Made by a program: the position numbers and the translations under genes. From Mizuhopecten yessoensis (Eukaryota): a stretch of 64,000 bases of DNA. Below the pieces are notes generated by a model. That model was given only the letters and a program-made list of their open reading frames with translations, was not told the origin of the DNA and ran no database searches. The stretch covers positions 37,865 to 101,864 of the forward strand of contig NW_018406103.1 of the NCBI RefSeq assembly GCF_002113885.1. The letters are read 5' to 3'. Positions 1,448 to 60,316 of this stretch are shown here, piece by piece. Within the stretch, counting starts at the first letter, position 1. Each line of letters opens with the position of its first letter.

Positions 1448-4283
1448 CTTTGGCTTCAGTTACATTGCTCACAAACAGACTCGCAAGTAGCTTTGCTCTT
1501 GTTGTAAATATCTCCTTCTGAAGTGTAAGCCCGATATTTTCATAGCCTGGCTCTGCTTCTAGTACTTCGCCGCTTAGGCACGAAGCTAATTTCACAACCA
1601 CTTCTTTCACCGTTTGAAGGTTGTACTTTTCGATCCAGAGTAGGTATGTGACAATTCGAGATGGGGGTATGTATATATCTACCTCGGAGACAGACTCCAT
1701 GCGTTGTCGGATGACTTCTACAAATTCTGTGATCATTTTTTCTGACCGATATTCATCTGCTAAGGGAAGCACTGTATCGAGTGTTTTATCTGTGAATACG
1801 AAAGAATGCATTTGCATATTTCATGTGTGTAACATGTAGAGAGAAATAACATTCTAAACGGTAACGACAAAATCCATTTTATGATTTCCTTTCCCCCCAG
1901 TTATGGGTGTTCGTTTAATAAGGAGCCCCGTACCACTGCCAAACACTGTAAATAAGTTTTTGAAAATGTTTTTTTTCGAGCATGACTAGAGATTTGAAAA
2001 ATCATTTCCGAAAAAAAAGTATACCTCGTGGAACTTTAATGAGTAATAAGAGATGAATAAACAAAATATCAATAATTCAACAACAGTTGAATGAGTGTAA
2101 AACGATAAGAGGAGTTTGACTGGGATTCGAACCCTGGACTTCAGATTCCTATACAATCGCTTGAACTAAAAATGTCCATGGTCAATTAAACTGTGCTTCA
2201 GTTATGTCTTAACGAAAGTTAAGGGGAGGTAACTGTATATAAGGGAAAATACTGCAGTGAGACAGGGATCCTTAAGTACAGACATCTTCGCCTGGCAAGT
2301 ATATATGAAAAATATGATATATTCTTTCCTTCACTACTATTCTGACAAAGTGTAACACTCGGAAACCCGAATGCAGGAGATTAGTTTCGATTCGGTTTGA
2401 ATCTGACAAATATCAAATATACGCATGATTACGTAAACAGCGTGATTAAGTATCCTTTAATATCAGTGCATGTAATAGTTTTCTCTCGTGTAGATGATTT
2501 TTAGTAGCAAAATGAGACCAAACTGTTGATCCAGCTAGCTGCAGATCCGCTGGGTCTTCTGAAAGAACTTGACCTGAATTTAATCTATTTCTGTTAACCA
2601 ATCAGATATATGTATGCTTCATAATTACCTGTAACATTGTCAGCAAAATTGGGAAGAAGACATTTTAGGAATGTGACCATATCATCATATGTTTTCCCAG
2701 GGAATTTCAGCTCCCTTTTCGTGTCGTCAGTGCATTCGTCTTTTTGACACTCTTTCTTAAGCCAAGCCTCAAAAATAGGTGAAGCAGATTCCAGTAAAGT
2801 TTTGTTTACATGAAGATGTTCATCCTCAATTACAAGAACCACATTGTTTGGCAGGATGCCTGGATCAATCTAAGCAAGAAAGGGTTTACAAGAAATATTA
2901 CTTGACACATCAAAAGAGCCGTCTTGCATTGAATAATATTGAAAGCTTTGAGCAATTATTCTGGCAACCCATTGCATATATGCCTTCTTCCGATTGTTTA
3001 TATTGAAGGGCTATTTTTCAGGGTTATTGACTATAAAATGAGAATATACGTATACTTCAGCAGTTGCGCCTCTTTAACCAAAGCCACTAGGTTATAGAGC
3101 AATGATTTGCAGAATCTTACAAAGAACAAGTAACAAGTTATATGATTGCTGTGTTATGGAATGTTTTAACATCGATATGATCTGAAAAGATCTTATATTG
3201 ATTTGGTTTTGTATATGTTTATTACATTATGACACAAAACAATCAATACTCAATACAGTATATGTATTAATTGTATAACGTCATAATGTTGTAACCGAAA
3301 CATTTAAATCAATTGCCTGAAGATGGCAGTTTGACTTCAAAACGTTATTTACCGTGTTGATGTTCAATTTGTATGTCTACAGATATATAAATAAATATAT
3401 CTTTCAAACCAGTGAAATGTCACCATTTTCCCAATATGATATCGATTGATTAAATGATATGTTTAAGCGTCCTGTTACTTTGGGTTCACGTTTTATTCCT
3501 CACCTTCCTGTGCTGCTTTGGAGAAAGTGGTACATCATCTTTATCGTTATTCGACTCCTCGTCTGATTTCTCGTCATGATCACATGGGGCATTGAGGTTT
3601 GGAATTATAACATCGTCTTCCTGAAGTCTGTAGTGATTATAAAAGTTATCAGTTTTCCTGTTTTTCCCACTTAGACACAAGCCAAGTCTGACAGTATTTC
3701 TATGATTGCAACCTGAATTGAGACAATTCCTTGCGGCAATGTAAATCCACATATACATTCACTTTCGATTTGTCACTTACATTCCTAGTATGATGGTAGC
3801 CGATATGATAACACAACACATCATAAAAAATAAAGTTATATTCAAAACTGAAACCTTATTTCGCACGGAGAATGTATTTATCTTTCTTTGTGTCACAACA
3901 AATATTTAATAACCGGCTGCTAAATCGAAATATATTTTAGCTTAACAGATCCCATTCGGTTTTTATATACACCAAAATGATTAGATAGTTACTTAGTATT
4001 TTATTTTTTTTAGGCATTTTTGCTATTAGATCGACGAACGATGCTTAGTACCCTGGACGATTTTGCATTAAACTTTTAAGTTCAATTTGTCAAACCTTTG
4101 GCACAACAATGCTTTATTTCAATCAAAACTTAGACCATAGCACTGTTTGGATACCAAAAAGCATCCATTTTTTCAACGGAAGACTATCGGATGCTCACGT
4201 TTTCAATGAATGATTTAATGAAATTGGTGCTTAGATTCTGCTATGTCTGTGACAGAATCCATTTAAGCGCTACTCCAATACCG

Positions 4284-4324
<41 letters not shown>

Positions 4325-7300
4325 ATAACACCGCTAATATGTCGTACAAATACTCATGTACTTGTACATATATAGTTGAATATTAAACATAGTCGCCGAT
4401 GTAACGACACACGATAATAATAAATTGATCATGACTGATCCCGGACGAGTTTGCTAGTGCGGTTCTCATAGTTTCCATCTCAATCAGAGTCAACTGATCA
4501 TTGACTCCAACTGTTAGAAAATATGATGCCCGAGACGAGAATGTGTTTGTATCTTTTCTGAAAGTCATTCAAATATTATTTAGTGTTAAGTAAGATAAAT
4601 AACAAAAGCAACTAAGCACGTATTAACAGAAGTGATTAAGTCTAGTGTTGTATTTTTACTCAAGCGTATCATAAACAGTTTATTTCATATTTGGCAATGT
4701 GTAAATTAAAGAAATTGAAGTCCTCGTTCATAAACCACGTACTTTCACTTTCGTTTTGATTTCCGGGATACCATTAATCGGGCTATGTGTATTGGTTGTT
4801 TGCCAATCTCTTATTCGGTGAGATTAACGAAAAATACCCGATACCACAAAGTATGCAGGTGGAACACGAATGCTACTTATGCTAAGGAAACATTAAACTA
4901 CCGGTAACAGATCAGACGGCGACATACAGACCTACTATACGAATACATTTGTATATCAACCCCACTTTAAACCATTTGCCAATGTACGTCTATACCGAGA
5001 AAGATTGTCGACGGGTAAGAATTGACAGGCAGTAGATACAATACTGGGACAATACTTGTTATCTTCTTTATCAACTCCGGCCCACACAGGATAACAAAGA
5101 CTGCACATATATGTGCATTCCATGCAGAACCGGGTTTTTACTTTTGCTTTGGGGTCAGGGGAGAAGATACAAATTTGCTGTCCACATTGCCACATTTGTG
5201 ATTAAGATTTGTTTGTTTCCACTCCCTTATTCCTTCGTTTGTATGGTATCTCCCAATGTACTAGAATGGCTTTAACTTCTGTAAGAACGTTAATTTCTGT
5301 AATCCCAAACAAACAAACAAACAAACAAACAGATGTGTACATTATGTACACGTTTTCCAATTCTGTTGATCAAGTGTATATTGAAGAAGTATATTGAAGT
5401 CCACGTACATAAAACATGAACTTTCACTTTTGTGTTGATTTCCAGGATGCCCTAAATCGTGCTAAGTGTATTGGATGTTTGCAAATCTTTAATTCGTTAA
5501 GGAATAAAGAATGCAACAATAAGTGTAACAGGGAATTACATGGACTATAACTAGAGGGAGGGTTATGTAAATACTACATCCAAACACATGCATGATGTTT
5601 GTTTAAGTGCTCACCAACTGAACCTCTATCAAGTTACGAAATACTTACGGCATTGTATCGCCGTATCCGTTGCCAACAAGAAACATGTGATCCTGTTATG
5701 TACATGCACAGTATAAGGAATGGGAATGTTTGTACATGACTAATACAAATAACACTATATCATTCCAATGACCAGAATAGCCCCAGTATTTAGTCAAAAT
5801 AAAAAGACATTTAACAGATTACAGATATAATGAAATGTTCATCCCGTAAAATATTTAGCGAAACAGAATTGTACACTTTATAAATTAGTATCAGTGATAG
5901 ATATAAATACATAATATTGTCATAAATAATATAATATTATATTGTCTTATACTGTGTAAAACGAAACAGAAAATATATTGATTGTTACTTCCAACACGAA
6001 CACCGAGATTTAGTGTATAGTTTGCAGCTACATAGACAATTGATGGGTGACCACTAAATCATCGTTGTACAAATTCGATATCAATTATGAGATAAGGAGT
6101 TGATCGCGTTTACATAGTGTATGGATTAACTGAATATACAGTTTTATTTGTGTAACAAGAGCATTTATCACTGTAGTGATATGTTTACGTAGTGAAATGC
6201 CTGTAGTTTTTGTTTCTACTATTTTCATTTATGTATTTAGCTATTTAATTATTTTATCTTTTGTCCTGTTCACATAGAATAAGATTATATGGCGAATGTT
6301 ATCTGACCAGCATTCAGGTGATCAAATGGCGCAATTGATAGCGCATTCGTTTTTCATCAAAGACGGCCGGGGATCGATTACCTGTCAGACGTAAAATGTA
6401 CGGGGCGACCTGCTCGACCATGTGGGTTTCCGGACCAACAATAATGATTTCAGATTTTTAGCGCGCTTCCATCTGGGCCAACAAGAATAAGTTATATTAT
6501 CATAATTATTATAATCCGCGGTTCTTATATACCGCTTTATGCCAACCTAGGTCGTAGATCGTCTCACAAATTATTTTCCGTGGTTATTAGGCCTTTGCAA
6601 CCAGCCAATATCTTTCGCAACTCCTTGGAGAGCATACAGCCGGCGCTGCCACTTAGGCGCTAACAGCTAGCATTTAACAATTCCATCACTGCACAACAAT
6701 GTACTCATTTACAGCTGATTAGACTGGAACAGGAGAAGTAAAGTATGTTGCTCAAAAATACAACAAAGTGTCCTGACGCGACTCGAACTCGCAACCCTTC
6801 AGTCACGAGCCTGGCGTCCTACCACCAGACTACAGTGCCTTTTAATATAAGTTCGGGCTAGTACAGGTATGATATATCGAACGTGAGTGTTTATTTGTTT
6901 GCAAGTCCTTCATCGAGTTAATATTTCTTCGGCTTTGTGTTGATGAAAAAGAAAAAATATGCTATCCCCATTTAAACATTTGTAATCAAGATTTGTCTTT
7001 TTTCACTTCATCATTCTTTCGTTTCGGTGGTATCTCCCAATGCACTAGCCTTCGTATATTGAAGAAGTTGATAAGTCCTCGTACATTACATTACATTACA
7101 TTTACTTACACGTTTATTTTGAGATCGGGGATGCCCTAAATCGGGCTATGCGTATTTGTTGTTTGCAAATCCTTTAGTCGATGATTTTAAAGTGTGACAC
7201 CCGACACCGCAAGGTATGCATTAGAGAACCAATTTAACGCTACGATTAACATGTAAACGAGCTATTTAAACAAAGCATTAATATACCGATAACAGATCAG

Positions 7301-7792
7301 ACGGCGACATACGGACCCACTGTACGAACACATTTGTATGTAAACTCTAATTTAAGCACTTTGTCAATGTACGTCTATACCGAGAAAAATTGTCGACGGG
7401 TTAGACTTTACAGGCAGAAGATCATCTTTATCAACTCCGGCCCACACAGGGCAGCAAAGAATGCACATATCTATGCCTCCCGTGCAGAACCGTGTTTTTA
7501 CTTCTGCTTTGGGGTCAGTAAAGAAGGAAAAACTGCTGTCCCTGTTGCAACAATAGAAACCAAGAATTGTTTTTGTGTTCACTTCCTTGCTTTGCACTAG
7601 CCTTTGTGTGACTTTAGCTGTTGGGATAACGTTAAAATATGTAACCCACAATAAACAAACAAACAAAAATGAATATGAACTACATTGGTTAACTAGATAG
7701 ACGGTTATACAAACACTTCATACAGACACATATGTTAAGTTTGTTAAATAGCTCATCAACACATATGTCCTGTTACGAAATACTTACGCCAT
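1448..7792 (-). CDS. BTB/POZ-domain gene, paralog 1 (3' exon lies outside the window). Exons: 7788-7792 or 5649-5653 (alternative 5-nt first exons), 3504-3627, 2629-2869, 1448-1789
   Basis: GT-AG boundaries and phases 2/0/1/1 match the other paralogs. The BTB exon reads IDPGILPNNVVLVIEDEHLHVNKTLLESASPIFEAWL...LKFPGKTYDDMVTFLKCLLP. Exon 4 reads DKTLDTVLPLADEY... No stops in the visible exons. Exon 2 has no ATG, so the upstream micro-exon is needed. Confidence 0.85.
4285..4323. repeat. (CAT)n microsatellite
   Basis: Directly visible. Confidence 0.95.
4741..4769 (-). promoter_or_regulatory. IRF-E/ISRE (AAAACGAAAGTGAAAGT on minus strand) next to a GAS-like TTCCGGGAT, intron 1 of paralog 1
   Basis: The sequence actttcactttcgttttgatttccgggat matches the IRF consensus GAAA(G/C)(T/C)GAAA(G/C)(T/C). 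A related copy is at 5420-5448. Function is inferred. Confidence 0.55.
5643..5720 (-). promoter_or_regulatory. Proximal promoter/first micro-exon module of paralog 1 (ATGCC|gtaagt)
   Basis: Conserved block acttacggcat...aacatgtgatc...acatgcacagtataagg, shared with five other copies. Confidence 0.6.
6317..6500 (+). mobile_element. tRNA-derived SINE, degenerate
   Basis: A-box-like tggcgcaattgatagcgc, B-box-like gggatcgatt, internal catgtgggtttcc. The tail matches the fragment at ~1305-1390. Confidence 0.55.
6515..6840 (-). mobile_element. tRNA-derived SINE, CORE-like
   Basis: Minus strand reads tgtagtctggtggtag...gagttcgagtcgcg (A and B boxes), then a CORE-like ttgagcaac...cagctgtaaatgagtac, then an AT-rich tail. 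Confidence 0.7.
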
Positions 7793-11059: not shown

Positions 11060-11280
11060 ATTGATTGTTTGGGTTGAATGTACTATCAACAGCTAAGGTC
11101 ATTTAAGGATGTGCCTCAATGTGTGTTATGTGAGCGTGCATGTTGGTATGTGTGCTAAAGGGAAAGTATGTGGGTATACGTGCCACCTTGTGATAGCGCA
11201 GATCTGATTCCGACTATGTAGTGCTATCTCACTGAAATACCAAGCCGAAGGCACTCAGCACAGCATTCCGCTCGGCCTTG
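11060..11280 (-). mobile_element. SINE fragment (paralogous copy at ~61185-61410)
   Basis: ttgtttgggttgaatgt..caacagctaaggtcatttaagga and tagtgctatctcactgaaat resemble mollusc SINE 3' regions. Confidence 0.5.
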
Positions 11281-14700: not shown

Positions 14701-17504
14701 TTTGGTATAGGTGTAGTCACGAAGTTCTTTTTTTTTGTTCTGAAATAGGTGTAATCACGAATAAGGTGTTATTGTCGATGTGTCAGTTTCACATAGCATA
14801 AGAAAAAAAACTCTTGTTCTTTCCTATGCCTATTTCAAGACGAAACCGACCAATAATATTCCAACCAGTAAGACGTAACATCACACATATGCTGACGTAA
14901 CAAATATAAATCGTAGTCAATTTTCATTCAAATTCACGACAATAATCGCTTAAACTTCCTGGGATCACGAGTTATTCCTGAGCAATTTCGGAAAATGTTT
15001 CCACTGGATTTTTTTTTATTGGGAAAGTCGACCCTCACTAATTTTTATTTTTGAAGTATGAAATACATGAAATCAATATTTATGACAAATCCTTTTTATT
15101 GAACGTAATTACAAGTATTGACATATGTACAATGTAAAAGCTATCGAATTCATAAAGCATTTTGTGGTTACATTTTATGTAATACGAGCCCTATTATTAT
15201 ATTTGCTAATAAAAAATGTTAAACAAGACAAAGTTTATTATGAAACAAAATACAAGTAACAGTATTTACACAAATTGTTTGCTATGAATACTATATTACA
15301 TATGTGGTGTGAATTTATTACAGCGTACCATACTGTTGTATGTTTAAAACGACAGTATACTTTTCTATTGAAACCGACATCAAATTACTAGGTCTGACTT
15401 ATTTCATAAACGAACAACTCTGGTCAAACCGTTCCAATCGTTTGAATCGCGATAAACGAAAGCGGCCTAGAATAATACATACAAAACCCAGTAAACATTT
15501 TTTTTAGCGCTGGCATGTTTTGAAACATCCTCTACAGGAGCATGGAAGGAAGCAGTCACTCCACATGTGTATCTAGATTTATTACATTTTACCAGTTGAA
15601 TATCATGAATTATCCATTTGATAAAAACTAACATCTTCATTGCACTTCACTGAAATGTTACATCCTCACATGTGATGATATCACTTTTAATATTGTCCAA
15701 TCAGCATGGTCCTTTTTATTGATTGCGTAGATTTTCAGTTTCTAGTTCAGGTGAAGCGACGGTAGAATTAGTAGTTGATTTGGTATTTATGTTACTAAAC
15801 AATCGATATTATTTTTGTTTCTTAATCAAACCAGATAATAAAATTGCGCTTTGTCTTATGTTCAATCGTGACGTCATTAAAATCTGGCGTCAAATAGTAT
15901 GCTACTAATTCCTGCACCTTTTGATGCAGCAAAATTTTCGTGGTATCAAATGGAATAAATAATGAACAAAAAATGTTTTCCTTTTTAATACCATTTATAC
16001 TTCACGAGTATGTCAGAATATATCCTCTCTATATTACGGCACGATTAAGCCCTAGCAAAACTGATACATCAACAAAGGACTATAGATCATATCAAATGAG
16101 TGGGAAGTGATTAATATATCATGATCATTGTTTTTACTAACTAATCACTTCAACTCACTTTACACAACACTCTATGTTGTTACAAATTGGGTTGTTGTTA
16201 CAAATTGGGACGCAACAGAGCTATGAACAAGGAAACGAAAAGTCCATATTTGATTTTTTTTTTTTTTTTAAGTGCAATGTTAAACTACAATTAAGCAACA
16301 CGCCCATACTGATATTGAAGTATGAATTATTTCTTTAAAAAAATCCATAATTGATAAAGCTCTTCTCTCACCTCTTTGTATACAAACTACAGGTGTCTCA
16401 TGTAGAACACTGATGTGGGATAACTTTATCCGACAAAGTTGCACTTAATGACCCCGGTTAGGAGCTACCCACGTATGGGAAACCAGTGATCCTAGTTCTG
16501 GAACAAGTATAGTTTAAATATTGACTAGTGCGTGCGTGAAATCAACGTTTGCGTTCAATGTGTTCAGTACTAAATCGGCTGATGTTTCGAAACGTGAAGA
16601 CATTTCGATATGATACCTCACGTCATTAAATTGACATTTCTGTTCGTTGAAGAATATCTACTACCACAATATAGTAAGTATCTGACCACACGGATATAAA
16701 CAAAATTTAAACAAACTTGCCTAGGTTCTGACACCAATTAAATTATATACCCACGGGTACACTTTCCATATCACTTACACCTACATACTGTTCCCGACGT
16801 GCTATCACTTACTGAGAGTGAGATTATCACACTCAGTCAATGGACGTTTTAACGGTTGTTCGACTGTGGCATCATAAGACATTGCTGTCATCTGATAATG
16901 ACGCTATAATAGTAAAACGCAATGGATTCACTCATGTGGGATTACTAGAATGTTCCATACCGTTGGATATGAGATAGGAGGATGAAAGTCTCGAGGCTTT
17001 GCCGATGACCAGATATTAAAGAATCTTACGCTGATGGTTGAGATTTTTCTGTGTTACTCCATAAAAGGGAGTTATTATTTTTCTCCCACATTAAATACAA
17101 ATGGTAATTTTATGAAATGCAAATGTTGATTTCCTAATTTCCAGCAGATCGGAACGAACGTAATCTGCTATTGTTGATTTGACGTAATTGCATCGTTATC
17201 TCTGTCTTATAAGAGAGAATTAAAGAATTTATCACCCCCTTGGAGGTGTGATCGTGGAATTTTTTATCGAGGGTTGACATTCCCCCACCTCACCCTCAAG
17301 GGGGTGAATGATTCTTTTTCTCTTAATCTGTGTATCAGATGCATATTGTAGTGTTAACGTTTCAGGCTAAATTCAGGGTTGACGTGACGTTGATGCATTG
17401 TTGACGTGGCGTCATTGTATGTTTGACGTGACGTCTTACCATTGTTTTGAATAGGGGAACCCCCGTCTCAATTCTAGGGAGTGAAAAGGATATCTCACAC
17501 TGGG

Positions 17505-22400: not shown

Positions 22401-22593
22401 TGAAAAATGACGATCAAATTGTGTTGGGACCCGTACCTATGTACATTCTTAATTGTCTTATTCGATATTTATATATGACCTTATCTAAACAAAAAGAAGA
22501 CAAAGGGCAACACTATATACAGTGTGAATCTTAAAGAGACGGGAATACTCAGCGCGATAGTTGTGTCATGGAGTGCATCACATATCAGTTTCA

Positions 22594-22735: not shown

Positions 22736-25700
22736 TTTTTCCTCTCTTTTTTAAGCGATCGTCTACTTACAACACATGCTTAGTCAATTGTACCTTAATT
22801 GCTGTCTCTCTGTGTCTGTCTTTTCCCCATGTCTCTGTCTCTCTCGTTTTTTCCTCTCTTTTTTAAGCGATCGTCTACTTACAACACATGCTTAGTCAGT
22901 TGTACCTTAATATCTGGCTTTGCAACTGGTTTGATGTCATCTTTAGACTCGATTTCATCTTTAGACTCGATTTCATCTTCAGATTCGTCAGAGTAGCTGT
23001 CCGACTCACCATCATCCACACGTTTGCTAGGAAATCGAGCAGAATGAAAATGGAATTAAAATTGCACGATTTAAAATATAATACAACTTACTACATGCAT
23101 CGGTTATAGTTCAGCACTATATATTTTTACCTTCAAGCAGAACAAAAGGTAACAATGTCAGTGCACCATATGTCCATTTTGCCATAAAGGACTAAAATCA
23201 GATGAGGCAGAAGGCGGTTACACTTCTGGAACACCTGGTTATATTCTTCTTGTTCTTCATCAACGGTCTCAATGTAAATCCTTACTTTGGTCATATTTTA
23301 CCCTACTTTTAACGATCTTGAGATTTAATTAAGGTTTTGCTAGCATTTCAGTATTTTCCTATATTTGTTTTGAAACATGAATGTACGTAGAAAATGAAAA
23401 AAGGAGGGTGAACCTGCCAAAAATATCCTTACAAACCAGTTGCAAATTGACATTGCTTATTGACTGCTGCAGATAACTTATTCGCGTAGGAGTATTGTAT
23501 GTTTTCCGTGCAAAAAATGATATCCTGCTACAATATTATTGAAACCTCGGGGACTTACAGTTCACCAAGCAGAGGCAAGCCCGTTGTGAATTAAATAAGT
23601 ACTAGTAAGACCTTTTGAAACATGGAATACCTCGATGCTGAAAACCAAACAAATATATGACCAAGAAATGTGTAGAAAAAGAATAATAATAGGAAATCGT
23701 CTTCTACTTCATCGATGATACCCGCCGTGTTGCCAACTAATAATGTTCCATAGGTTGACCTCATTATGAAAGATATACAGTTAAGAACACACAAAATGAG
23801 TTATGTAAATATTAAAAGACCTAGTAAATATATTCTGAACTAGGTACATGTACCTCCAAACTACATGGATAATTTCAGTGATCTATATGGCATGGTTTTA
23901 TTTTTACAATATTATTCCAATATACGTTAACTTGTTCTTTCACTTTCGGTTTGTTTCCCACCTTCCCTGTATCATGATAATCGCTATGTCGACAAAATAA
24001 GATAAATCGCATTCAGGGCTTATTTCTGAAATTATGTTTAGAGAATAGATCTTTTAAAACACAAAATAATTTAAATACATCAGGTCAGTATAAAATCATA
24101 TTTTACATAATATGTGCATAGTAAAACCTTATCAAATCAAAATCGAGTCTCTGATATTTAAGCAATGAATGTTTATCGAATGTTGTTATGGTCCTATAAC
24201 ACTAATTACTATTAGGGCTTTATTTATGTAAGTTTGTCAGCAATAGAAATGTTGGTTATAGAACCATAACAATATTTGCTAAAGTATTCATTATGTTCAC
24301 ATTTTCAGATAGTAGTTATGCTTTATTTAGTTATTTCGTACAGTTCTTTGAACAGCAAATAAAGTTTTGACAGCAAAATATTGATGACGTCACAATAGAG
24401 TTTGAAGACGTTGCAATAGCAAATGATGCTATAGTCTCACAACATTTGCCTTCGCAATGCATTGCAATGGAAGGATGCAGAGCAAACATAAACATATTCA
24501 TACATAAACGAGTTACCTCTCTTTGCATTGATTTTAGATTTGTATGCTAGTCATGCCTGTCTATTGTCAATTTCATCCCTATTTTGAAATATTGACCAAT
24601 CAGAATACAGGACAAAACCGTTTTGTTGATGAATCCACCAGTTTGTCATGTTGAGTTCATCAACAAATAGCACACTTACAGAAATCCGGTGATGATAACC
24701 TCGCACGAACATTTGCACGGTCCAGCTACGCGCCTGGTGGAATAAACACAGTAAAATACGTGTATCTTAAATGTTTGCAGGTGACCGAACATATACATGT
24801 ATCACCACACAAACATTGTAGATTGAGAGATTCGAAATAACAGCTCGTCAGGAACGAGCACTGCTTCCACGATAAAATGTTCGCGTTATTCTTGTGGACG
24901 AAATACTTCATTACAACATTAGCATTTTTTTCCTTGAATATCAATATGTGATAATTGCTACCAACACTGAAATAGCCTCTTCTCAAACGCGAAATTAATT
25001 ACTTAAATATACAGTTACACTTTGCAGTACGGATGAAGTCGAATTCGGAAACGGTCTACACAAGGTATTTTTATGTTTATGCATTGAAAGAGTGTTTTCC
25101 ACGTCTATAACATTTATGCCAGCATATCGTTATCTTTCAGGCAATATATAGCGTCACCAAATAAGGATTTATTTTGATAAACATTATAACTTCGTAATTC
25201 TGATAAGAATAAGTCCAGGATTTTCGGATGCTCTATCAACTACACCCGCCATGTAAATGCAGGTAAAATTGAAACTTACATATTTAAATTGAGAACAAGG
25301 GTAAAGAGTGCACTGATAAGCATGATAAAAAACTTCAACCTTAATATCTCAAATAAAATATGGTGTTCTCAACCATAGAATTTGACCATAGTCTTCATCA
25401 AAATACATCATTAAATAAATAATATATGTTCAGAGCAACAGCTTCACTTTTCATTCCTCAAGTTATATCACAGTTTTTATATCGTAATGTTTTCTTTTTT
25501 CAGCAGCAAAAACGATATTCCGAAGTTATTTTGAGAGATTTAAACAACTTTTCCCGACGAAATGTCTCGGTGGGTTCATTGATACAGAATATGAATATTG
25601 CATTACTGCATTATTAATAAGACAAGCAAACAAACCTTTTAACGGGCTTCGGGGAAGGAGTTGACGTTTCTATTTCTGACGTAGCTTTCCTGAAAGATGA

Positions 25701-33965: not shown

Positions 33966-33966
33966 C

Positions 33967-38829: not shown

Positions 38830-38837
38830 NGATTCTT

Positions 38838-41800: not shown

Positions 41801-44752
41801 TTGGCGGAGACATAAATATAAAACAAAATTAATATACAAAATTATATTTATATCATATTTGGTTACAGTCTTTCAGACTTTAAATGTAACCACCGTTATT
41901 CTTCAAATTGTATAAAAATAGATACGTGATGAAAATCGGATCCATTATCTACAACCCTTAAAACTGAGACATCCACTTTCATAACTTAAGAATGAATAAG
42001 GTGTAGATTGGATGCCATTAACGATAGTAAACAATGAATTGTTTCCTATTGAAGTTAAGTTGATTTTTTTAGGAGAATCAAGTATGGTAAAGAGAACAAA
42101 ATAAATGTCTTTATATTTTGGTATCATTATCTAGAAATCTGTTAGGATTCGTTGGAGTATATATCACAAAACCCCCCATTAAGAAATAGTAGGTTAAAGG
42201 CGTTGTAGCACAGCGGACAAACATGCATGCCAAAAGAGAACAAGGCCAGACTCTACTCTTAAGTCGGCAAACCTATTACAACGCAAAATAACTGCCATCC
42301 TTTCGGGGTACCTGCTCCGTTTGAAACAGCAACGACCGCTAGATAATACAACCGGTTTTGTTTAACGTAACAATTTGTAACTCAAAAATTGTCTCTAACG
42401 AGATAATCACATACCACTCTAAGTGGTGGATCACTCGGCTCGTGTGTCGATGAAGATCGCAGACAGGTTCGTAAATTAATGTGAATTGTAGTTCCTATTA
42501 AACATCGACATCTTGCAAACTGCAGGCACATCAACGTTGCGCCTTGTACCGTACACCTCCCAGTTATTGCATCGGGAGCGGTCTCAAATGATGAATCACA
42601 GTCTCCAAGCGACTAACATAAATACCAATTCGGCTGAAGAATCGCATACGACAAAAAAATCCTAAAGGTCAATCTTGTGTATTGTTATCTTATTATATCT
42701 TTAAAGACACAGCCTGATCGGTGCACGTCTTATCAAATGGGGAAAATGGCCCTTTAAAATACAGTGACAAGGAAGTTAAGGTCGCTATATGTGACGAAGC
42801 AATAGAGGTGATGGCAAGTCGTTGATGTCATTTAACGCAAAGTAAGATAACATTATAAACGTGTTTTTCTGAACTGTAGTGATAGTCTATTATTGTATGT
42901 CACTAAACAATATCATAAAAAGTTAATCTTTAAGAGTGCGTAAACAATTTCTAATCTAGTTGAATAATTGTAATTGTGCAATCGGGGTTCTTTGCACAAA
43001 TCACTCGACAAACATTGGTTGTTTCTTGTAGTTTATTACATTATCTTGGAATCCCTAAAATGATATAAAACACTTATTGTACAAAACAGACACATACTAG
43101 ACATATTGCGAATCAAACACACCGCACGGTAACTTTTACATGACGCGAACAATGGAATATTAAAAAGGACAAGAACACAATTCTATGACAACAACAACAA
43201 CCTAATCAGTTTAACCAAACAATGGAATAATAGTATCGTTACATGCAAATTTCAATTATAGAACATTCTCAGTATAGAATGTAATTCATATTTTACTTTT
43301 ACTTTTAGTCACGACTAATTCAGACAGAGGAATTTACGTCAAGTCTTAAATAAACACCTTCCAAATAATAATAATTGATTAATTACATGTATATATATTC
43401 TGTAAATGACTTACCCTGCATGTGGTGCTGAGGATAGCTTAGCTCAATTATCGATCAAGCATACCAATCAAATCAAGAAGCCATCGATGATATATATATA
43501 CTTTCCACTACCAGCATTAAATGTATGTCTAACCCCTTGTAAGTTAAGTGCCCAAGTGAACAAAGAGAGCAAGAAAAACGGAAAAGAAAAGAAGCGTCGC
43601 ATTGCGCATGCATGTCCGAAATGGTCAGTCCGGTCAACAAAAGAGTACAACACATAACACATATGTTACACAATCATAAGCAAATTTCAAGAAAAAATTA
43701 TTTATTTTCTATCAAATCCAAATAATCAATATTAAAGCCAAAATATTAATAAACACTTAATACAACAGGGTGCCACATAATCAACAGATGTACTTTCACA
43801 TTCCTTGACTATTTCAAGGACACCTTAAATGCTCGTTCCTAACATGTAGAAAAATGAACTATATTTATTGAGTATAAAATACACGTTTAGCTTAAAAACC
43901 TATTCTTCCATATAATCATCTTGTTAGTTAAACCCATGTGTTAGTTTAAAGATATACATTAATAATTTAAACAAAACTTATTTCTAAGATAATAACACTG
44001 TTATTCTCATTTACAATATCACAGAAAACATAAAGCTGAATTTAAGTGTGTGTGCTTTTGTTGTTTGCAGGCCATTTATTAGGTGGGTTTAAAGTGTGTC
44101 ACCCGATAACGCGAGGATATGCAGGTTGCGCAGCAATGCTACTTGTAACAGGTAAACGATCAACACATGCAAGGTTCTTCTTCAGCTATGTAAACACTAA
44201 AATACCGGTAACAGGTCAGACGCCGATATACTGTACGAATATGATCACTCCGCTTTAAGTCCTTTGCCAATTTACATATATCACGAGAAAAACTCTTGAC
44301 GGGTAAGACTTGACATGCCATGGATACAATAATGGGACACTACGAGTTAAAATAAAAGAGTAATTATTAACGAGTTCTGGACCACACAAGGCATCAAAGA
44401 ATGCATCTATATGTGTAGCCCGTGCAGAATAGGATTTTTTTCTGCTTTGCGGTCAATGAAGAAGATACAAATCTGCTGTCCCCATTGCAACATTTGTGAT
44501 CCAGATTTGTTTCTTTTTCACTTCCTTATTCTTTTGTTTCGTGGTGTTTCCCGATGCACTAGCCTTCGTATGACTTTAGCCGTTGTGTGAACGTTACTAG
44601 CTGTGACCCCCAAACAAACAAACAAAATAGCACATGACTACATTGTAAAACTAGATAGATGGTGATGCAAATACTGCATACAAGCACATATAGTATTATG
44701 TTAAATAGCACGCTAGCTGAACCTCTGTCCTGTTACGAAATACTTACGCCAT
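38838..44752 (-). CDS. BTB/POZ gene paralog 3. Exons: 44748-44752, 41627-41756, 40939-41185, 39852-40193, 38838-39310 (398 aa as assembled; ancestral stop at 38875)
   Basis: All junctions are GT-AG and in phase (5+130+247+342+473 nt). A 1-nt deletion at ~38960-38966 relative to paralog 4 changes the C-terminal frame. Confidence 0.85.
42415..42515 (+). pseudogene. 5.8S rRNA pseudogene fragment (5' ~100 nt), possibly with preceding ITS1 remnant
   Basis: actctaagtggtggatcactcggctcgtgtgtcgatgaaga..taatgtgaattg..aacatcgacatcttg matches the conserved metazoan 5.8S 5' half, with substitutions. No 18S or 28S nearby. Confidence 0.9.
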
Positions 44753-55800: not shown

Positions 55801-58800
55801 TCTGGAATGTTACTACTGAGGGAAAGATTAGTATTAAAGTTGCCTTATCATGTTTGTTGTAAAATTCGTTTGTGAAGTTATAATTATTNAAACTCAATAA
55901 AAGGGGGTTCGCAAAGTCTGGAATGTTACTACTGAAGGAAAGATTAGTATTAAAGTTGCCTTATCATGTTTGTTGTAAAATTCGTTTGTGAAGTTTAATT
56001 ATTGTCATATTTTAGGTGAAAACAGATCACGATATATTTTTTCAAACACATTATCCTCTTGCTTTGTGAATTATTTTCTTTTAAATGAAACTAGATAGAC
56101 AGACTTACTTTCAGCTTCTGTTACACTGCAAACAAATAGACTCTCAAGTAGTTTGGCTCTGGCATTAGATACTTCCAGTTGAAGTCTTAGGCTGACATTT
56201 TCGTAGTCTGCAACTGCCTGTAGCTCTTCGGATTCCAGGTACGAAGCTAACCTCACAACACATTCTTTACCCGTGTGGAGATTATATTGTTCGATCCAGC
56301 GTAGGTATGTGACGACCCGAGAAGGCGGTATGTATATATCCGCCTCGAAGACGGACTCCACGTGCTTTCGGATGACTTCCACACATTCTGTGATCAAGTT
56401 TTCTGTCCGATACTCATCTGCTAAAGGTAGTACTGTGTCCAGCTTTTTATCTGTAAATAACCGGATTTAGAGGGAAGTATGATTTATTTTGTAACTATAA
56501 ATCAAGATGATATTTAAATATGGTTCTACGCCATCTTCCTCCACATTTAAACAGACAATCCTAATATTTATGTCTCGGACATAATTTTATATTATTTGAA
56601 AAGGTGTTTCGACCGAAATGTCCATTGGAAAACATCTATATCCACTGTAATACCATTAATCATTGAGTGATCCCGCGTTTCCGTCAAGTACAGAGTATTT
56701 ACAACGGGAACAACCTATTCTCTGAGCGCCAAGAACTGCGACACTTTGAAGAATCATCTCCGACCAAAAGTTTTCGTACCCGCAAATGATCCCATACATT
56801 TAGTATGCAATCGATACACTATTATCCCTCTTTCATCATCGATTCCCGGGGGGCTACGTTCGATCACTTACGTTCTCTGAGCCTTTGTTTTTTGTCATAG
56901 CAAAATTTAAGACACACGATTAGTTATTTGATTGGTCGAAGGAACAAAAATTGCCCCATCGCTAGGCTGATACTAGACTAGCGGGATAAACATCCGAGGC
57001 GTATTCAAACAATACAGTGGGTCCTATTCTAAGTCTATTAAATGTGCTTATACTATTATTTATTTTGCAAACTAAAATTGTTACTAAAAAAATGATCATA
57101 GTTACAGCACATATTTATTATTACCTGTAACTTTGTCAGGGAAAAAGGGCAGAAGACATTTTAGGAATGTGGCCATCTCATCATAGGTTTTCCCAGGGAA
57201 CTCCAGCTTCCTTTTAGTGTCGTCAGTGCACTCGTCTTGTTGCCACTCTTTCTTAAGCCAAGCCTCAAAAACAGGTGAAGCTGATTCTAGTAAGGCTTTG
57301 TTTACATGAAGATTTTTTTCTTCGACTACCAGTATTACATCGTTCGGCAGGAAGCCTGGATCTATTTGAGCCTAAAATTTGATGAAGGTTTTTACGGACA
57401 TGTCCAAAGAATTCTTTCAGTGTCAGTTACTATTATTCATTCATTTGTCAAAAGTCTCATAATCAGAGTAATGCTATATTTAATAAGACAATGATTAGGG
57501 AATTATAAGAAAGATGTTGAATTGGGAAGCTTCATCACTGAATTCATAATTTAAAGTACGGAACTCACCAGATTTTGTTCCTGATGTCAATAACGAACAC
57601 TTTAGAGGAATAACTTATACAACATCCCTACATATTATATTTTGTGATCCTTACTATAGACATGGGCTGGTTGTTATATCTTCTTGTTGTTTTAGTAATA
57701 TTATAAAGTATTATCATCTGAACTTGTGAATGAATAACATCCTAATAACTTGCAACATATATCAAAAGTTCCGAACGTTATAGCGATTGATAAAAGCATA
57801 CATCGGCTACTCACAACACACGTTTCGTCCGTTACTTCAATATCCAGTATTGGCACTGGTTTGGTGTGATCACCAGACTGATTTGTGTCGTATTCTAAAC
57901 TTTCATCGCACTGGTTTTGAAGAAGAACACCAGGTTTCTGCATTCTATAAAGATTAAAAAAATGGTTTGCCTTAGCGTACATATCAACTGGTGGAAACAT
58001 AAATGTAAAAAATATAATATAAAAAAATACAATTTTATCATAATTAATTAGTCTTTCAGAGTTAAAATGTTAACACTGTTATTCTTCAAATTGTATAAAA
58101 ATAGATAAAATATCTACAACCCTTAAAACTGAGACATCCACTTTTATAACTAACTAACTAATAAATAAGTAAGGTAAAGATTGGATGCCATTAACGATAG
58201 TAAAAAAATCATTATTTCTTAATCAATTCAAGTTGATTTTTTTAAGAAGACTCCAGTATAGTAAAGTGAACAAAATGAATGTCACGGTTTCATTATCTAG
58301 AAATCTGTTAGGGTTCGTTGGAGTATATATCACCAAAAACATGAAGAAATAGTAGTTTCAAGGAGTGTTAACACAGGGGACAGGGCTAGACTGTATCCCA
58401 TGAGTGAAGGGGAATCCTGTCATGGATGTTGGATTCGGGGCTCTCAAACATTATTCATTTTGGAAAACATAGTTTTGACAAACTGCAACCTTTTTCGGGG
58501 TACCTGCTTTTGTTTAAAGAGCAACGGCCGCCCAAATCTATTTTCACGTAATAATTTGTAACCCAAAAATGTCTCTAACGTGATGATTACATACCACTCT
58601 AAGTGGGGGATCACTCGGCTCGTGTATCGATGAAGATGTTGTAGTGGCTTTTTTATTATTGTTTTTATGTTACTAAACCATATCATGAAAAGGCAATTTT
58701 TCAGATTGTGTACACTTATTCTAATTTTGTTGATTTATTGTAATTAAAAGGTATACTTTCACTTTCGTTTTGGTTTCCTTAAATTGGGCTTAAGGTATAA

Positions 58801-60316
58801 TCGTGCATAACATGTATAAAAAAAACTTTATTTATAGAGTATAAAAGACACGTTTAGCTTAAAAATCCAATCTTCCACGTGGTCCTCTTGCCAGTCAAAT
58901 ACATGTGTAAGTTAAAAGATATACATTATTTATTTACACAATTATTATTTCTAAGATGATATCACAGTTATCTTCATTTACAATATCAAAATACAAAAAG
59001 CTGAAGTAGATGTATGTGTTGTTTGCTAGTCCTTTATTTGGTGAATTTAAAGGGTGACACCCGAAAACGTGAGGTATACAGTTAGGGCACCAACGCTACG
59101 AGTAACAGGTAAACGATCATTACATGTAGGGTCCTTCTCCAGCTAAGTAACCTTTAAAATACTGGTAACAGATCAGACGCCGATATACTGTACGGATATC
59201 ACCACCCCGCTTTAAGTCATTCACCAATTAACGACTCTTGACGGGAGCGACTTGAATTGCAGTAGATACAATAACACGAAATTACGTGTTAAAATAAAGA
59301 TTCGTTATCAACGAGGTCTTGTCCAAACAGGGCAACAACAAAATCACATGTATCTGCAGCCCGTGCAGCCCGTGCATAATTAGATTTTTTTTTCTCCTCC
59401 TAAGGGGTCAATGAAGAAAATGTCCGCTGACTCATTGCCACATTTTTGTTCCAGATTCCTTTTCTTAATTCATGATTCTTTCGTCTCGGCGGTGTCCCCT
59501 TAAGCACTTACCTTTGTATGACTTTAGCTGTTGTGAGAACGTTACGAGCTTTAACCTCAAACAAATCTGCTGATCAAGTGTAAATTAAAGAGGTTGATCA
59601 GTCTTAGTACATAAATCATGCAATTTCACTTTCGTTTAGATTTCCAGGAAACCCTAAATCGGGCTATGTGTATTTGTTGTTTGCAAATCCTTTATTCGGT
59701 GAGTTTAAAGTGTGACACCCGATGCCGCAAGGTATGCAGGTGGGTCACAAACGCTACGAGTAACAGGTAAACGAGCTAAAAAGGGAAACATTAAACTACT
59801 GTTAACAGATCAGACGGCGACATACGGACCTTCCGAACGAATACATAGCTGTCTGCTCACGAACGTCTATCCCAAAAAGACTATCAACGAGTAAGACTTG
59901 ACATGAAGTAGATACATTACGGGGAAATTACGTGTTAAAATAAAGTTTCTTACACAGGCGACAAAAATAAGCCACATATATGTGCAGCTCATACAGTACC
60001 GTTTTATTTTCTTCAGCTTTGTGGTCAGTGAAGAAGAAAAAGTCCTCTATCCCCATTGTAACATTTGTGATCCTGATTTGTATTTTTCACTTCCTTATTC
60101 TTTCGTTTCTATGATCTCCCAATGCACTAGCCTTTGTATGACTTTAACTGTTGTGAGAAAGTTACTAGGTGTTATCCCAAACAAACAAAAATGTACATGG
60201 ACTACATTGTATAACTAAATAGATGGTGATGCAAATACTGCATACAAACACGTATACTATTACGTTAAATAGCAACATAGCTGAACCTCTGTCCTGTTAC
60301 GAAATACTTACGCCAT
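52900..60316 (-). CDS. BTB/POZ gene paralog 4, apparently intact, 381 aa. Exons: 60312-60316, 57815-57944, 57125-57371, 56109-56450, 52900-53321
   Basis: 5+130+247+342+422 = 1146 nt, open, all GT-AG. Reads MAMQKPG..AQIDPGFLPNDVILVVEEKNLHVNKALLESASPVFEAWL..ERHVLQMCKCI*. Confidence 0.88.
53683..55733. mobile_element. ~2-kb insertion in intron 4 of paralog 4 (unclassified; contains a SINE-like piece and a ~155-bp x3 tandem repeat at 55245-55700)
   Basis: Absent from the paralog 3 intron (gtccaactgcaggc at ~39591). Flanked by ccaaatgca / ccaactgca. Confidence 0.6.
58595..58637 (+). pseudogene. Shorter 5.8S rRNA pseudogene fragment, paralogous to 42415-42515
   Basis: actctaagtgggggatcactcggctcgtgtatcgatgaaga, with the same upstream flank (ttcggggtacctgct...). 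Confidence 0.85.
58755..58771 (-). promoter_or_regulatory. IRF-E/ISRE motif in intron 1 of paralog 4
   Basis: actttcactttcgtttt is identical over 17 bp to 4741-4757. Confidence 0.55.
59624..59650 (-). promoter_or_regulatory. ISRE plus consensus GAS (TTCCAGGAA) composite element, intron 1 of paralog 4
   Basis: tttcactttcgttt-aga-t-ttccaggaa. Confidence 0.6.

What the first reader, a model, noticed from the sequence alone, without database searches (positions are those of the whole stretch)
3758..59650. IRF-E/ISRE motifs, some paired with GAS, recur in the 5' regions of the paralogs
Seen: TTTCACTTTC(G)TTT-type motifs (minus strand GAAAGTGAAA) at 3758 (partial), 4741, 5420, 23937, 27342 (variant), 28279, 58755 and 59624. 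They are degenerate in paralog 3 (~43295, ~43792). At 4741, 5420 and 59624 a GAS-like TTCCnGGA(T/A) follows within a few bp, and it is perfect at 59642. Known: these are the IRF1/2 and STAT consensus sites, and bivalves have IRF/STAT-based poly(I:C) responses. Inference: the BTB genes are interferon-stimulated-like antiviral genes. Caveat: the copies are partly paralogous, so not independent, and the DNA is AT-rich.
Basis: partly seen in the sequence, partly recalled or inferred. Interest (0 to 1): 0.8.

Follow-up and report, generated by a model that had tools for sequence, protein, structure and literature searches.

The report
Conserved IRF-type switch in scallop BTB genes
Four neighbouring scallop-specific BTB genes each carry, in their first intron, a short DNA module that looks like a vertebrate interferon-response switch. 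Its core is kept at the same place in three scallop genera, so it is very probably a working control element, but nobody has yet shown that infection switches it on.

Summary
The motifs are real and are at the stated coordinates. The window is from Mizuhopecten yessoensis. It holds four tandem minus-strand paralogs of a BTB family known only from scallops (P4 = LOC110450888, P1 = LOC110450891).

- **ISRE core:** GAAAGTGAAA occurs 5 times, all in gene sense, against about 0.4 expected. It is the core of a roughly 50-bp module, GG-(T)TCCnGGAAA-n6-8-GAAAGTGAAAGTA, present in 10 copies.
- **Location:** The modules are not in the 5' flank. They lie in intron 1, 0.2-0.95 kb downstream of a 5-nt coding first exon (ATGGC|GTAAGT).
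- **Conservation:** The same layout holds in a second M. yessoensis cluster, in Pecten maximus and in Argopecten irradians. Across genera, only exon 1a and the ISRE core align in 1.9 kb. The chance of the 12-mer in one such segment is about 2.5e-4.
- **GAS half:** It is weaker. An intact TTCN3-4GAA survives in at least one copy per genus with a variable spacer, but it has decayed in most Mizuhopecten copies and is not enriched window-wide.
- **Internal promoter:** In P4 a splice donor 112 nt after the distal ISRE is used, which suggests an internal promoter.

IRF or STAT binding and induction by dsRNA or virus remain untested. This scan found similar conserved ISREs at other genes of this genome. 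I class it as a new member of a known kind.

The parts
59613..59665 (-). P4 distal module: GAS TTCCTGGAA (59642-59650), then 8 nt, then ISRE GAAAGTGAAA (59624-59633). It lies 679 nt downstream of exon 1a.
59512..59590 (-). P4 putative alternative first exon 1b. The donor CAAAG|GTAAGT has its last exon base at 59512, 112 nt after the ISRE. The 5' end is not mapped; about 59590 is a guess.
   Evidence: joint 56450>59512 in 3 reads of run X24, with GT..AG on the minus strand; sequence. Isoform X2 lacks the exon-1a start.
58746..58790 (-). P4 proximal module with a perfect IRF-E 12-mer GAAAGTGAAAGT (58755-58766). No GAS. It lies about 810 nt upstream of exon 2.
60312..60316 (-). P4 coding exon 1a, ATGGC, followed by donor GTAAGT. 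Isoform X1 (MAMQKPG...) uses it.
57814..57944 (-). P4 exon 2, with the internal ATG at 57943-57941.
   Evidence: joint 57370>57814
57125..57370 (-). P4 exon 3 (BTB domain).
   Evidence: joints; Pfam BTB
56109..56450 (-). P4 exon 4.
   Evidence: joint 56450>57125 and 63 loose ends at 56109 that read into exon 5; 100% match to P0001.
52900..53322 (-). P4 exon 5 (C-terminal domain and stop codon).
43783..43831 (-). P3 module with a decayed core (GGAATGTGAAAGT) and a decayed GAS (GTCCTTGAA). It lies 945 nt downstream of exon 1a.
44748..44752 (-). P3 exon 1a (ATGGC|GTAAGT).
28268..28318 (-). P2 distal module. The GAS is replaced by further GAAA repeats (GAAAttGAAAcGAAAgtGAAAt). It lies 680 nt downstream of exon 1a (28968-28972).
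27342..27378 (-). P2 duplicate of the distal module, cut short by a roughly 50-bp deletion right after GAAACGAAAGT. It lies downstream of the duplicate exon 1a (27855-27859).
23929..23978 (-). P2 proximal module (GGGAAAcaaaccGAAAGTGAAAG), about 0.9 kb upstream of the P2 acidic exon 2 (about 22905-23025).
7098..7147 (-). P1 outermost module, decayed (AAATAAACGTGTAAGT). It lies 674 nt downstream of the intact exon 1a (7788-7792).
5411..5463 (-). P1 module (TCCTGGAAA ... AAAAGTGAAAGT), downstream of a damaged exon-1a copy (ATGCC, 5649-5653).
4732..4784 (-). P1 module with a perfect IRF-E 12-mer (4741-4752) and a GAS half site TCCCGGAA.
3747..3797 (-). P1 proximal module, partial (GAAAGTGAAT), 129 nt upstream of exon 2 (3504-3627).
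15733..15755 (-). Separate composite outside the module family: TTCACCTGAA, then 3 nt, then GAAACTGAAA, in the spacer between P1 and P2. It is kept in the second M. yessoensis cluster (L005:6672-6694).
25648..25676 (-). Separate composite in P2 intron 1: GAAATAGAAA, then 10 nt, then TTCCCCGAA.

Best explanation
The motifs are the core of an ancient cis-regulatory module in intron 1 of a scallop-restricted BTB gene family. The ancestral layout was a STAT-type GAS palindrome (TTC-N3/4-GAA), 8-14 nt of spacer, and then an IRF-E/PRDI-type site (GAAAGTGAAAGTA). The module lies 0.2-0.95 kb downstream of a 5-nt coding first exon, which has its own promoter.

The most likely mechanism is as follows. 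Scallop IRF proteins bind the tandem GAAA half-sites, possibly together with STAT where the GAS survives. The module then acts as an inducible intronic enhancer. In at least P4 it also acts as an internal promoter, giving a transcript that starts just downstream of the module (exon 1b, donor at 59512) and translates from the ATG in exon 2 (isoform X2).

Shown:
- The motif is present and non-random.
- It is conserved in position and sequence across three genera.
- The exon-1b donor is used.
- Expression varies strongly between runs.

Inferred:
- IRF or STAT binding.
- Induction by dsRNA or virus.
- An antiviral role for the protein, which looks like a SPOP-like BTB adaptor.

Tandem duplication of a roughly 0.65-1 kb unit (exon 1a plus module), and of the whole gene, multiplied the module to 10 copies in this window. 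Several of these copies are decaying.
For: - **Non-random motif:** exact 10-mer 5 against about 0.4 expected, all in gene sense. A module HMM finds 10 copies, all on the minus strand and all inside the paralogs' 5' parts.
- **Gene structure:** database isoforms MAMQKPG (X1) and MQKPG (X2) and the ATGGC|GTAAGT micro-exon place the modules in intron 1.
- **Same architecture elsewhere:**
  - M. yessoensis second cluster: L005 exon 1a at 10001, module at 10741; L005 24867, module at 25403; L006 18373, module at 19028.
  - P. maximus L001: 6337, module at 6802.
  - A. irradians L003: 10001, module at 10452-10488; and 22735, module at 23067-23098.
- **Footprint:** in cross-genus comparisons of 1.9 kb, the only colinear matches are exon 1a and the ISRE core.
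- **Specificity:** the 12-mer AAAG[TC]GAAAGTA occurs at +349 to +472 in 3 of 4 non-Mizuhopecten exon-1a introns and nowhere else in 105 kb. The chance per segment is about 2.5e-4.
- **Inverted copy:** a more distant A. irradians paralog (L004) has an inverted composite, GAAAATGAAACT with TTCGAGGAA 14 nt away, at +330 in intron 1. An element that works in either orientation points to DNA-level protein binding rather than an RNA signal.
- **GAS:** the half-sites are kept and the spacers vary: TTCCTGGAA, TTCATGGAA, TTCTGGGAA, TTCGGGGAA and TTCTGGGGAA.
- **Composite enrichment:** GAS+ISRE 4 against 0.27 expected in the window.
- **Internal promoter:** donor 59512, 112 nt after the ISRE, is used.
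- **Variable expression:** P4 exon depth is about 100 in run X24, against 0 in X19 and about 1 in X22, at similar read numbers.
- **Literature:** oyster IRF2 and IRF8 activate mammalian ISRE and IFN-beta reporters and are induced by poly(I:C) (PMC5557890).
Against: - No binding or induction data exist for these genes.
- The conditions of runs X19, X22 and X24 are unknown, so the expression difference could reflect tissue rather than induction.
- Within the most recent duplicates, the flanks are as well conserved as the motif. The excess conservation therefore rests on the older and cross-genus comparisons.
- The exon-1b joint rests on 3 reads, and it skips exons 2-3.
- No joint into exon 2 was reported, so the main start site in X24 is unresolved and may lie just upstream of exon 2.
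- The exon-1b donor is not visibly conserved in Pecten or Argopecten.
- GAS is intact in only 1 of 10 window copies and is not enriched window-wide.
- One family gene shows no module (P. maximus L002), and L004 has only the inverted variant.
- The GTG-type core is equally a consensus PRDM1/BLIMP1 site.
Confidence: 0.6

Rival explanations
1. The conserved core is mainly a PRDM1/BLIMP1-type repressor site. A Blimp-1 homolog would bind AAGTGAAAGT and keep the genes silent in most tissues, with or without IRF competition. It would then be a developmental or tissue switch rather than an antiviral one.
For: The scallop core (A/C)GAAAGTGAAAGTA matches the in-vivo BLIMP1 consensus AAGTGAAAGTGAA. It also matches human shared BLIMP1/IRF-E probes such as the BTN3A3 and SP110 sites (AAAAGTGAAAGTA/T). 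It is the G-type rather than the C-type (AACTGAAACT) that excludes BLIMP1 (PMC2938208). P4 is nearly silent in two of three RNA runs.
Against: - Such G-type sites in vertebrates are typically shared with IRF1 and IRF2, so this reading overlaps the main one rather than excluding it.
- The adjacent GAS palindrome and the extra GAAA repeats in P2 fit IRF/STAT better.
- The L004 variant is C-type (GAAAATGAAACT), which BLIMP1 would not favour.
Confidence: 0.17
2. The module is a conserved element with a function unrelated to IRF, STAT or BLIMP1. Examples are a site for another factor that reads GGAA/GAAA repeats (ETS, NFAT/Rel-like), or an RNA-level signal in the intron or 5' leader such as a splicing or polyadenylation control.
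For: - Orientation is the same in nearly all copies.
- An AATAAA lies about 25-30 nt upstream of a-type modules.
- Low RNA coverage spans 60355-58998 and then drops.
- The GGAAA just upstream of the ISRE is better conserved than the TTCC half of the GAS.
Against: - The best-conserved 12-16 nt are exactly an IRF-E.
- The L004 copy is inverted yet keeps the GAS-ISRE arrangement, which argues against a strand-specific RNA signal.
- Shared orientation in the other copies follows simply from common descent.
Confidence: 0.12
3. There is no function. An AT-rich chance motif was copied along with a locally duplicated segment or transposon.
For: - The ten window copies arise from tandem duplication of a 0.65-1 kb unit and of the genes.
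- Young copies show no excess conservation of the motif over the flanks.
- Several copies are decaying (7105, 27349, 43794, 3757).
Against: - The core is kept at the same intronic position in three genera, where nothing else but the micro-exon aligns.
- RNA-contig depth over the unit is only 2-3 times that of single-copy intron, so it is not a high-copy transposon.
- Groups of copies whose flanks no longer align still share the core.
Confidence: 0.03

Closest known systems
IRF-E / PRDI-type IRF binding element (vertebrate IRF1/IRF2 sites, such as PRDI of the IFN-beta enhancer and the IRF-Es of PSMB8, BTN3A3 and SP110)
   Same: The sequence GAAAGTGAAAGT fits G(A)AAA(G/C)(T/C)GAAA(G/C)(T/C) exactly. 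It has tandem GAAA half-sites 2 nt apart with an AANNGAAA context. It lies in the 5' regulatory part of its genes and is conserved across genera (consensus as cited in PMC2938208).
   Different: It lies in intron 1, downstream of a start-codon micro-exon, rather than within about 200 bp upstream of a mapped start site. The host is a mollusc with only a few IRFs and no proven ISGF3. Binding and induction are untested.
Composite GAS + ISRE/IRF-E promoters of vertebrate interferon-gamma/IRF1-type genes, and the interferon-inducible alternative promoter of ADAR1 (own knowledge, not tested here)
   Same: A STAT-type palindrome lies within 8-14 nt of an IRF site. There is a second, possibly inducible, first exon downstream of a constitutive-looking promoter. 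Two protein isoforms differ at the N-terminus, MA-MQKPG against MQKPG.
   Different: GAS is intact in only a minority of copies. The isoforms differ by just two residues. The inducibility of either promoter is unknown.
Conserved ISRE promoters noted earlier in this scan for other M. yessoensis genes (a cGAS-like receptor, s1-517146; 'gene C', s1-517121)
   Same: Same genome, same kind of motif, and the same argument from conservation across scallop genera.
   Different: Those sites are described as lying just upstream of the genes, with an ISG15-like core. Here the core is the G-type IRF-E, it is intronic, it is multiplied by tandem duplication, and it belongs to a scallop-only BTB family. I did not re-test those notes.
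PRDM1/BLIMP1 binding site
   Same: The core AAGTGAAAGT is the BLIMP1 consensus (PMC2938208).
   Different: There is no evidence for a scallop Blimp-1 role. A GAS lies next to the site, and a C-type variant occurs in a paralog.

Membership tests
IRF-E / ISRE (IRF-binding cis-element) | Tandem GAAA half-sites with a 2-nt spacer that match G(A)AAA(G/C)(T/C)GAAA(G/C)(T/C) | tested here: met
   Perfect 12-mer at 4741-4752 and 58755-58766. Exact 10-mer at 5 sites. One mismatch at 4 more.
IRF-E / ISRE (IRF-binding cis-element) | More frequent or better conserved than background or flanks | tested here: met
   5 against about 0.4 expected. Across genera, only exon 1a and the core align. The 12-mer is present in 3 of 4 foreign introns at a chance of 2.5e-4 each. 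Not met within the young duplicates.
IRF-E / ISRE (IRF-binding cis-element) | Sits in a promoter or enhancer of the regulated gene, near a transcription start | tested here: inconclusive
   It lies in intron 1, 0.2-0.95 kb after exon 1a. One copy is 112 nt upstream of a used donor, supported by 3 reads. No start site is mapped.
IRF-E / ISRE (IRF-binding cis-element) | Bound by an IRF protein | not testable with these tools
   Only indirect evidence: oyster IRF2 and IRF8 activate mammalian ISRE reporters (PMC5557890).
Interferon-stimulated-like (dsRNA- or virus-induced) gene | Transcript rises after poly(I:C), virus or an IFN-like cytokine | not tested
   Only a more than 50-fold difference between three RNA runs of unknown condition. 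No paper names the genes.
GAS (STAT-binding element) | Palindrome TTC-N3-GAA (N4 for some STATs) | tested here: met
   - **N3:** 59642-59650 in the window, L005:25418, L003:10452 region, L003:23068 and L004:10657.
- **N4:** L001:6780.
- **Not met:** 9 of the 10 window modules lack an intact palindrome.
GAS (STAT-binding element) | Enrichment over background | tested here: not met
   TTCNNNGAA: 16 against about 22 expected. TTCCNGGAA: 2 against about 1. Only the pairing with an ISRE is enriched, 4 against 0.27.
GAS (STAT-binding element) | Bound by STAT | not testable with these tools
   No data.
PRDM1/BLIMP1 site | Match to the (A)AGTGAAAGT(G) core | tested here: met
   AAGTGAAAGT is present in 4743, 5422, 23938, 58757, L001, L003 and L005. 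Consensus taken from PMC2938208. Binding is not testable.
BTB/POZ domain proteins (Pfam PF00651) | Significant match to the BTB profile above the gathering score | tested here: met
   44.4 bits, E = 2e-11 for P0013, and all five family members tested pass. Single exons also pass. The nearest solved structure is the SPOP BTB domain, but only at E about 1e-3. No BACK, MATH or Kelch domain was detected.

The most novel reading that the evidence does not exclude
A scallop-only, tandemly expanding family of SPOP-like BTB adaptors forms a lineage-specific set of interferon-like response genes. Another reader of this window noted a hypervariable C-terminal loop in these proteins. The family would be driven by an ancestral STAT+IRF composite element that has stayed in intron 1 since before Mizuhopecten, Pecten and Argopecten diverged. 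That element would work as an inducible internal promoter beside a constitutive one. This would give a concrete, testable cis-regulatory read-out of a JAK/STAT-plus-IRF programme in molluscs, with ubiquitin-ligase adaptors as fast-evolving effectors.
Probability: 0.3. Interest if true: 0.6.

Novelty: new member of a known kind. Interest (0 to 1): 0.42.

Why it matters
Molluscs have IRFs, STAT, RLRs, cGAS/STING and an interferon-like cytokine. Very few native target promoters are known, and most reporter work uses mammalian ISRE constructs (PMC5557890, PMC8218723).

This finding offers a short native element, conserved across three scallop genera, with a clear wild-type and decayed-copy series inside one locus. 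The copies range from perfect to one mismatch to deleted. That gives a ready-made substrate for EMSA, DAP-seq and reporter tests of scallop IRF, STAT and Blimp-1.

It also flags an undescribed scallop-restricted BTB family as candidate immune effectors. Only 12 representatives were found among 1.8 billion proteins.

It does not reveal a new kind of control. The same scan has already found conserved ISREs at other genes in this genome.

Tried and rejected
- **Word-index protein search** with exon 4 alone: blank because of the length limits. The exhaustive search was then used, with exon 4 by reference only.
- **Bacterial-type promoter/terminator scan** of 57900-60800: irrelevant for a eukaryote and ignored.
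- **Transposon-borne motif:** rejected. RNA-contig depth over the unit is only 2-3 times that of single-copy intron, and the element sits at an orthologous intronic position in other genera.
- **'Motif more conserved than flanks' within young duplicates:** not true. The argument had to be moved to the older copy groups and to cross-genus comparison.
- **Proximal promoter upstream of the gene:** rejected for most copies once the ATGGC micro-exon was found.
- **Mapping the start site from RNA reads:** the single read-laying run gave 194-nt bins and no joint into exon 2, so the main start in X24 stays open.
- **Literature searches** for these gene IDs, for BTB genes among bivalve antiviral responders, and for scallop ISRE sites found nothing specific.
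- **NF-kappaB reading of GGGTTTCC** in the P4 module: considered by eye only. It is not conserved in other copies and was dropped.
- **Position weight matrices (JASPAR IRF1/STAT1):** not available offline, and I did not type them from memory. IUPAC consensus counts against Markov-3 and dinucleotide-shuffle backgrounds were used instead.


Full report
**What the window is.** The 64-kb window carries four tandem paralogs of one gene, all on the minus strand (self-BLAST and repeat families). Their exons encode a BTB/POZ domain (Pfam PF00651) followed by about 220 residues with no known domain.

I searched exon 4 alone, by reference, and did not join exons. The word-index search was blank. The exhaustive search found only 12 representatives among 1.84 billion proteins. 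The named ones come from Mizuhopecten yessoensis, Pecten maximus and Argopecten irradians; the weakest hit is an unnamed JGI/IMG protein.

Paralog 4 (P4) is LOC110450888 at 100% identity. P1 is LOC110450891. The genome is therefore the Yesso scallop, and the family appears scallop-restricted. The nearest solved structure is the BTB domain of SPOP, but only weakly (E about 1e-3). 'CUL3 adaptor' is an inference.

GAAAGTGAAA occurs exactly at 4743, 23938, 28279, 58757 and 59624. All five are on the minus strand, which is gene sense. The expectation is 0.35 in dinucleotide shuffles and 0.43 in Markov-3 simulations, and no simulation reached 5.

One-mismatch copies sit at 3757, 5422, 27349 and 43794. 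GAAANNGAAA gives 19 hits against 6.9 expected, and 15 of them lie in the paralogs' 5' parts.

The perfect GAS is at 59642-59650. At 4761 and 5440 only TCCnGGAA remains. GAS alone is not enriched. A GAS(N3-4) within 25 nt of an exact ISRE core occurs 4 times against 0.27 expected.

**The motif is part of a module inside a duplicated unit.** In gene sense the sites share about 50 bp:

GATTTAGGG - (T)TCCnGGAAA - TCnAAAC - GAAAGTGAAAGTA - CATG

A profile built from eight copies finds ten copies in the window. All are on the minus strand and all are in the paralogs' 5' parts:

| Paralog | Module copies |
|---|---|
| P1 | 3797-3747, 4784-4732, 5463-5411, 7147-7098 |
| P2 | 23978-23929, 27378-27342, 28318-28268 |
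| P3 | 43831-43783 |
| P4 | 58790-58746, 59665-59613 |

The copies belong to a 0.65-1 kb unit that has been duplicated in tandem within each paralog and along with the genes.

Within young duplicates the flanks are as conserved as the motif. One copy (7105) is decayed and another (27349) is cut by a deletion. Between older groups of copies whose flanks no longer align, the densest conserved block is CA-AAACGAAAGTGAAAGTAC. I found those groups by searching for the motif, so this alone is biased.

**Where the modules really are.** Two database isoforms of P4 differ by an N-terminal 'MA'. That 'MA' comes from a 5-nt coding first exon, ATGGC followed by donor GTAAGT. This micro-exon is present once or twice per paralog:

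| Paralog | Exon 1a |
|---|---|
| P4 | 60316-60312 |
| P3 | 44752-44748 |
| P2 | 28972-28968 and 27859-27855 |
| P1 | 7792-7788, plus a damaged ATGCC copy at 5653-5649 |

The modules therefore lie in intron 1, 0.2-0.95 kb downstream of exon 1a. They are not in the 5' flank.

Exon 1a has its own conserved upstream box, CTGCGCATGT, about 55 nt before the ATG. This box is shared by Mizuhopecten and Argopecten.

**Cross-genus evidence.** I fetched the loci of the family's database proteins. The ATGGC|GTAAGT micro-exon is present in each of them except L002. An ISRE module follows it in gene sense:

| Species and locus | Exon 1a | Module |
|---|---|---|
| M. yessoensis second cluster, L005 | 10001 | 10741 |
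| M. yessoensis second cluster, L005 | 24867 | 25403 |
| M. yessoensis second cluster, L006 | 18373 | 19028 |
| P. maximus, L001 | 6337 | CGAAAGTGAAAGTA at 6802 |
| A. irradians, L003 | 10001 | 10452-10488 |
| A. irradians, L003 | 22735 | 23067-23098 |

In pairwise comparisons of 1.9 kb around exon 1a between genera, the only colinear matches are exon 1a itself and the ISRE core.

The 12-mer AAAG[TC]GAAAGTA lies at +462, +472 and +349 in three of four non-Mizuhopecten introns. It occurs nowhere else on either strand of 105 kb. A Markov-3 background gives one such hit per 4000 segments of 1.5 kb. The two Argopecten copies are paralogs, so they count as one lineage. Even so, chance is excluded.

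The fourth intron belongs to the more distant paralog L004. It has an inverted composite at +330: GAAAATGAAACT with TTCGAGGAA 14 nt away. An element that keeps its two-part layout when flipped points to protein binding on DNA rather than a strand-specific RNA signal.

One family gene, P. maximus L002, shows no module.

**The GAS half.** An intact TTC-N3-GAA lies 8-14 nt from the ISRE in P4 (TTCCTGGAA), L005 (TTCATGGAA), both L003 copies (TTCTGGGAA and TTCGGGGAA) and L004. P. maximus has the N4 form, TTCTGGGGAA. The half-sites are kept and the spacer varies. The background chance of such a palindrome in a 30-nt stretch is about 1%.

This fits an ancestral GAS+ISRE composite. Nine of the ten window copies have lost it, mostly by a single base change (ATCC..GGAA). 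In P2 it has been replaced by further GAAA repeats. The GGAAA next to the ISRE is better conserved than the TTCC half. A reading as a third IRF half-site, or as a site for some other GGAA-binding factor, cannot be excluded.

**RNA evidence (one call only).** Run X24 (poly-A RNA) covers P4 exons at depth about 100. Runs X19 and X22 give 0 and about 1 at similar read numbers. Their tissues and treatments are hidden, so this shows strong regulation but not induction.

Joints confirm introns 56450>57125 and 57370>57814. Loose ends at 56109 read into the ORF at 53316, which is exon 5.

Three reads join 56450 to 59512. That donor, CAAAG|GTAAGT, lies 112 nt downstream of the distal ISRE. With isoform X2 lacking the exon-1a start, this suggests an alternative first exon 1b driven by the module. 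However, the joint skips exons 2-3, rests on few reads, and the donor is not visibly conserved in other genera.

No joint into exon 2 was listed, so the main start site in X24 is unresolved. It may lie just upstream of exon 2.

Low coverage (2-8x) spans 60355 to 58998 in both X24 and X5 and then drops. Many of these reads differ from the reference at fixed positions, so they come from another allele or a close copy.

**Interpretation.** The best-conserved sequence is a textbook IRF-E/PRDI-type site. Oyster IRF2 and IRF8 are induced by poly(I:C) and activate mammalian ISRE and IFN-beta reporters (PMC5557890). An oyster IFN-like receptor activates ISRE, STAT3 and GAS reporters (cited in PMC8218723).

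The most likely reading is an IRF-responsive intronic enhancer, ancestrally IRF plus STAT. In P4 it may also serve as an internal promoter.

The main rival is PRDM1/BLIMP1. Its in-vivo consensus AAGTGAAAGTGAA and the shared BLIMP1/IRF-E sites of human BTN3A3 and SP110 are nearly identical to the scallop core (PMC2938208). In vertebrates such sites are contested by both factors, so the two readings overlap.

Chance and passive hitch-hiking on a duplicated segment are excluded by the cross-genus data.

**Novelty and score.** The kind of element is known. This scan has already reported conserved ISREs at two other genes of this genome (s1-517146 and s1-517121). I did not re-test those notes.

New here:
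- The target is an undescribed scallop-only BTB family.
- The element is intronic, behind a 5-nt coding exon.
- The ancestral layout is a GAS+ISRE composite.
- The locus holds a natural series of intact and decayed copies.

No paper in the library names these genes. I class it as a new member of a known kind, with interest 0.42.

Noticed in passing
window 60312-60316, 44748-44752, 28968-28972, 27855-27859, 7788-7792 (minus); L001:6337, L003:10001 and 22735, L004:10304, L005:10001 and 24867, L006:18373: The family's start codon sits in a first exon with only 5 coding bases (ATGGC) before a GTAAGT donor. This layout is conserved in three scallop genera. P1 exon 2 has no in-frame ATG and depends on this micro-exon. 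A second P1 copy reads ATGCC.
   Followed up: yes
window about 60365-60375 and matching places upstream of each exon 1a; L003:9940-9950 and 22680-22690: A CTGCGCATGT box about 55 nt before the exon-1a ATG is shared by all Mizuhopecten paralogs and both Argopecten L003 genes. It resembles an NRF1-type half-palindrome and may mark the constitutive promoter.
   Followed up: partly
window 61132-61500: RNA depth here is enormous: mean word depth up to about 32,000 per bin, and over 100,000 at single places, in run X5, and about 100 in X24. Hundreds of loose ends cluster at 61293, 61308 and 61352. A 45-60-nt piece is therefore shared with a very abundant transcript or high-copy repeat. The region is homologous to window 11196-11435.
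   Followed up: no
window 18671-19450: Three head-to-tail copies of a 260-bp unit at 100% identity, inside P2 between exons 4 and 5. This is either a very recent duplication or an assembly artefact.
   Followed up: no
window 22560-22920: A long (GAGACA)n-like microsatellite with a roughly 75-bp higher-order repeat lies just downstream of the P2 acidic exon 2. It produces spurious ORFs on both strands.
   Followed up: no
window 56450>59512 (run X24): A spliced form joins the putative exon 1b directly to exon 4 and skips the start-codon exon and the BTB exon. It rests on 3 reads and may be a non-coding or truncated isoform.
   Followed up: partly
window 59689-59694 and 59032-59037 (minus): An AATAAA sits 25-30 nt upstream of the a-type module, in the conserved stretch CACCGAATAAAGGATTTGCAAAC. 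RNA coverage that begins near 60355 drops at about 58998, roughly 35 nt after the second AATAAA. A short upstream transcript may end there.
   Followed up: no
window 60115-60510 (run X5 contigs): Contigs from another sample skip 145 bp (60319>60465) or go back 396 bp (60510>60115) around exon 1a of P4. This suggests structural variation of the duplicated unit between individuals.
   Followed up: no
window 5963, 8150, 10065 (plus strand): Each P1 upstream unit also carries an antisense ISRE-like site, AAAACGAAACAGAAAA. The matching places in P3 (about 45117) and P4 (about 60620) are decayed.
   Followed up: partly
L005 and L006 (M. yessoensis scaffold NEDP02076746.1) against the window: A second cluster of the same BTB family is 65-89% identical to the window over long stretches and keeps the gene order. 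It is either a diverged segmental duplicate or a very divergent haplotype assembled separately.
   Followed up: partly
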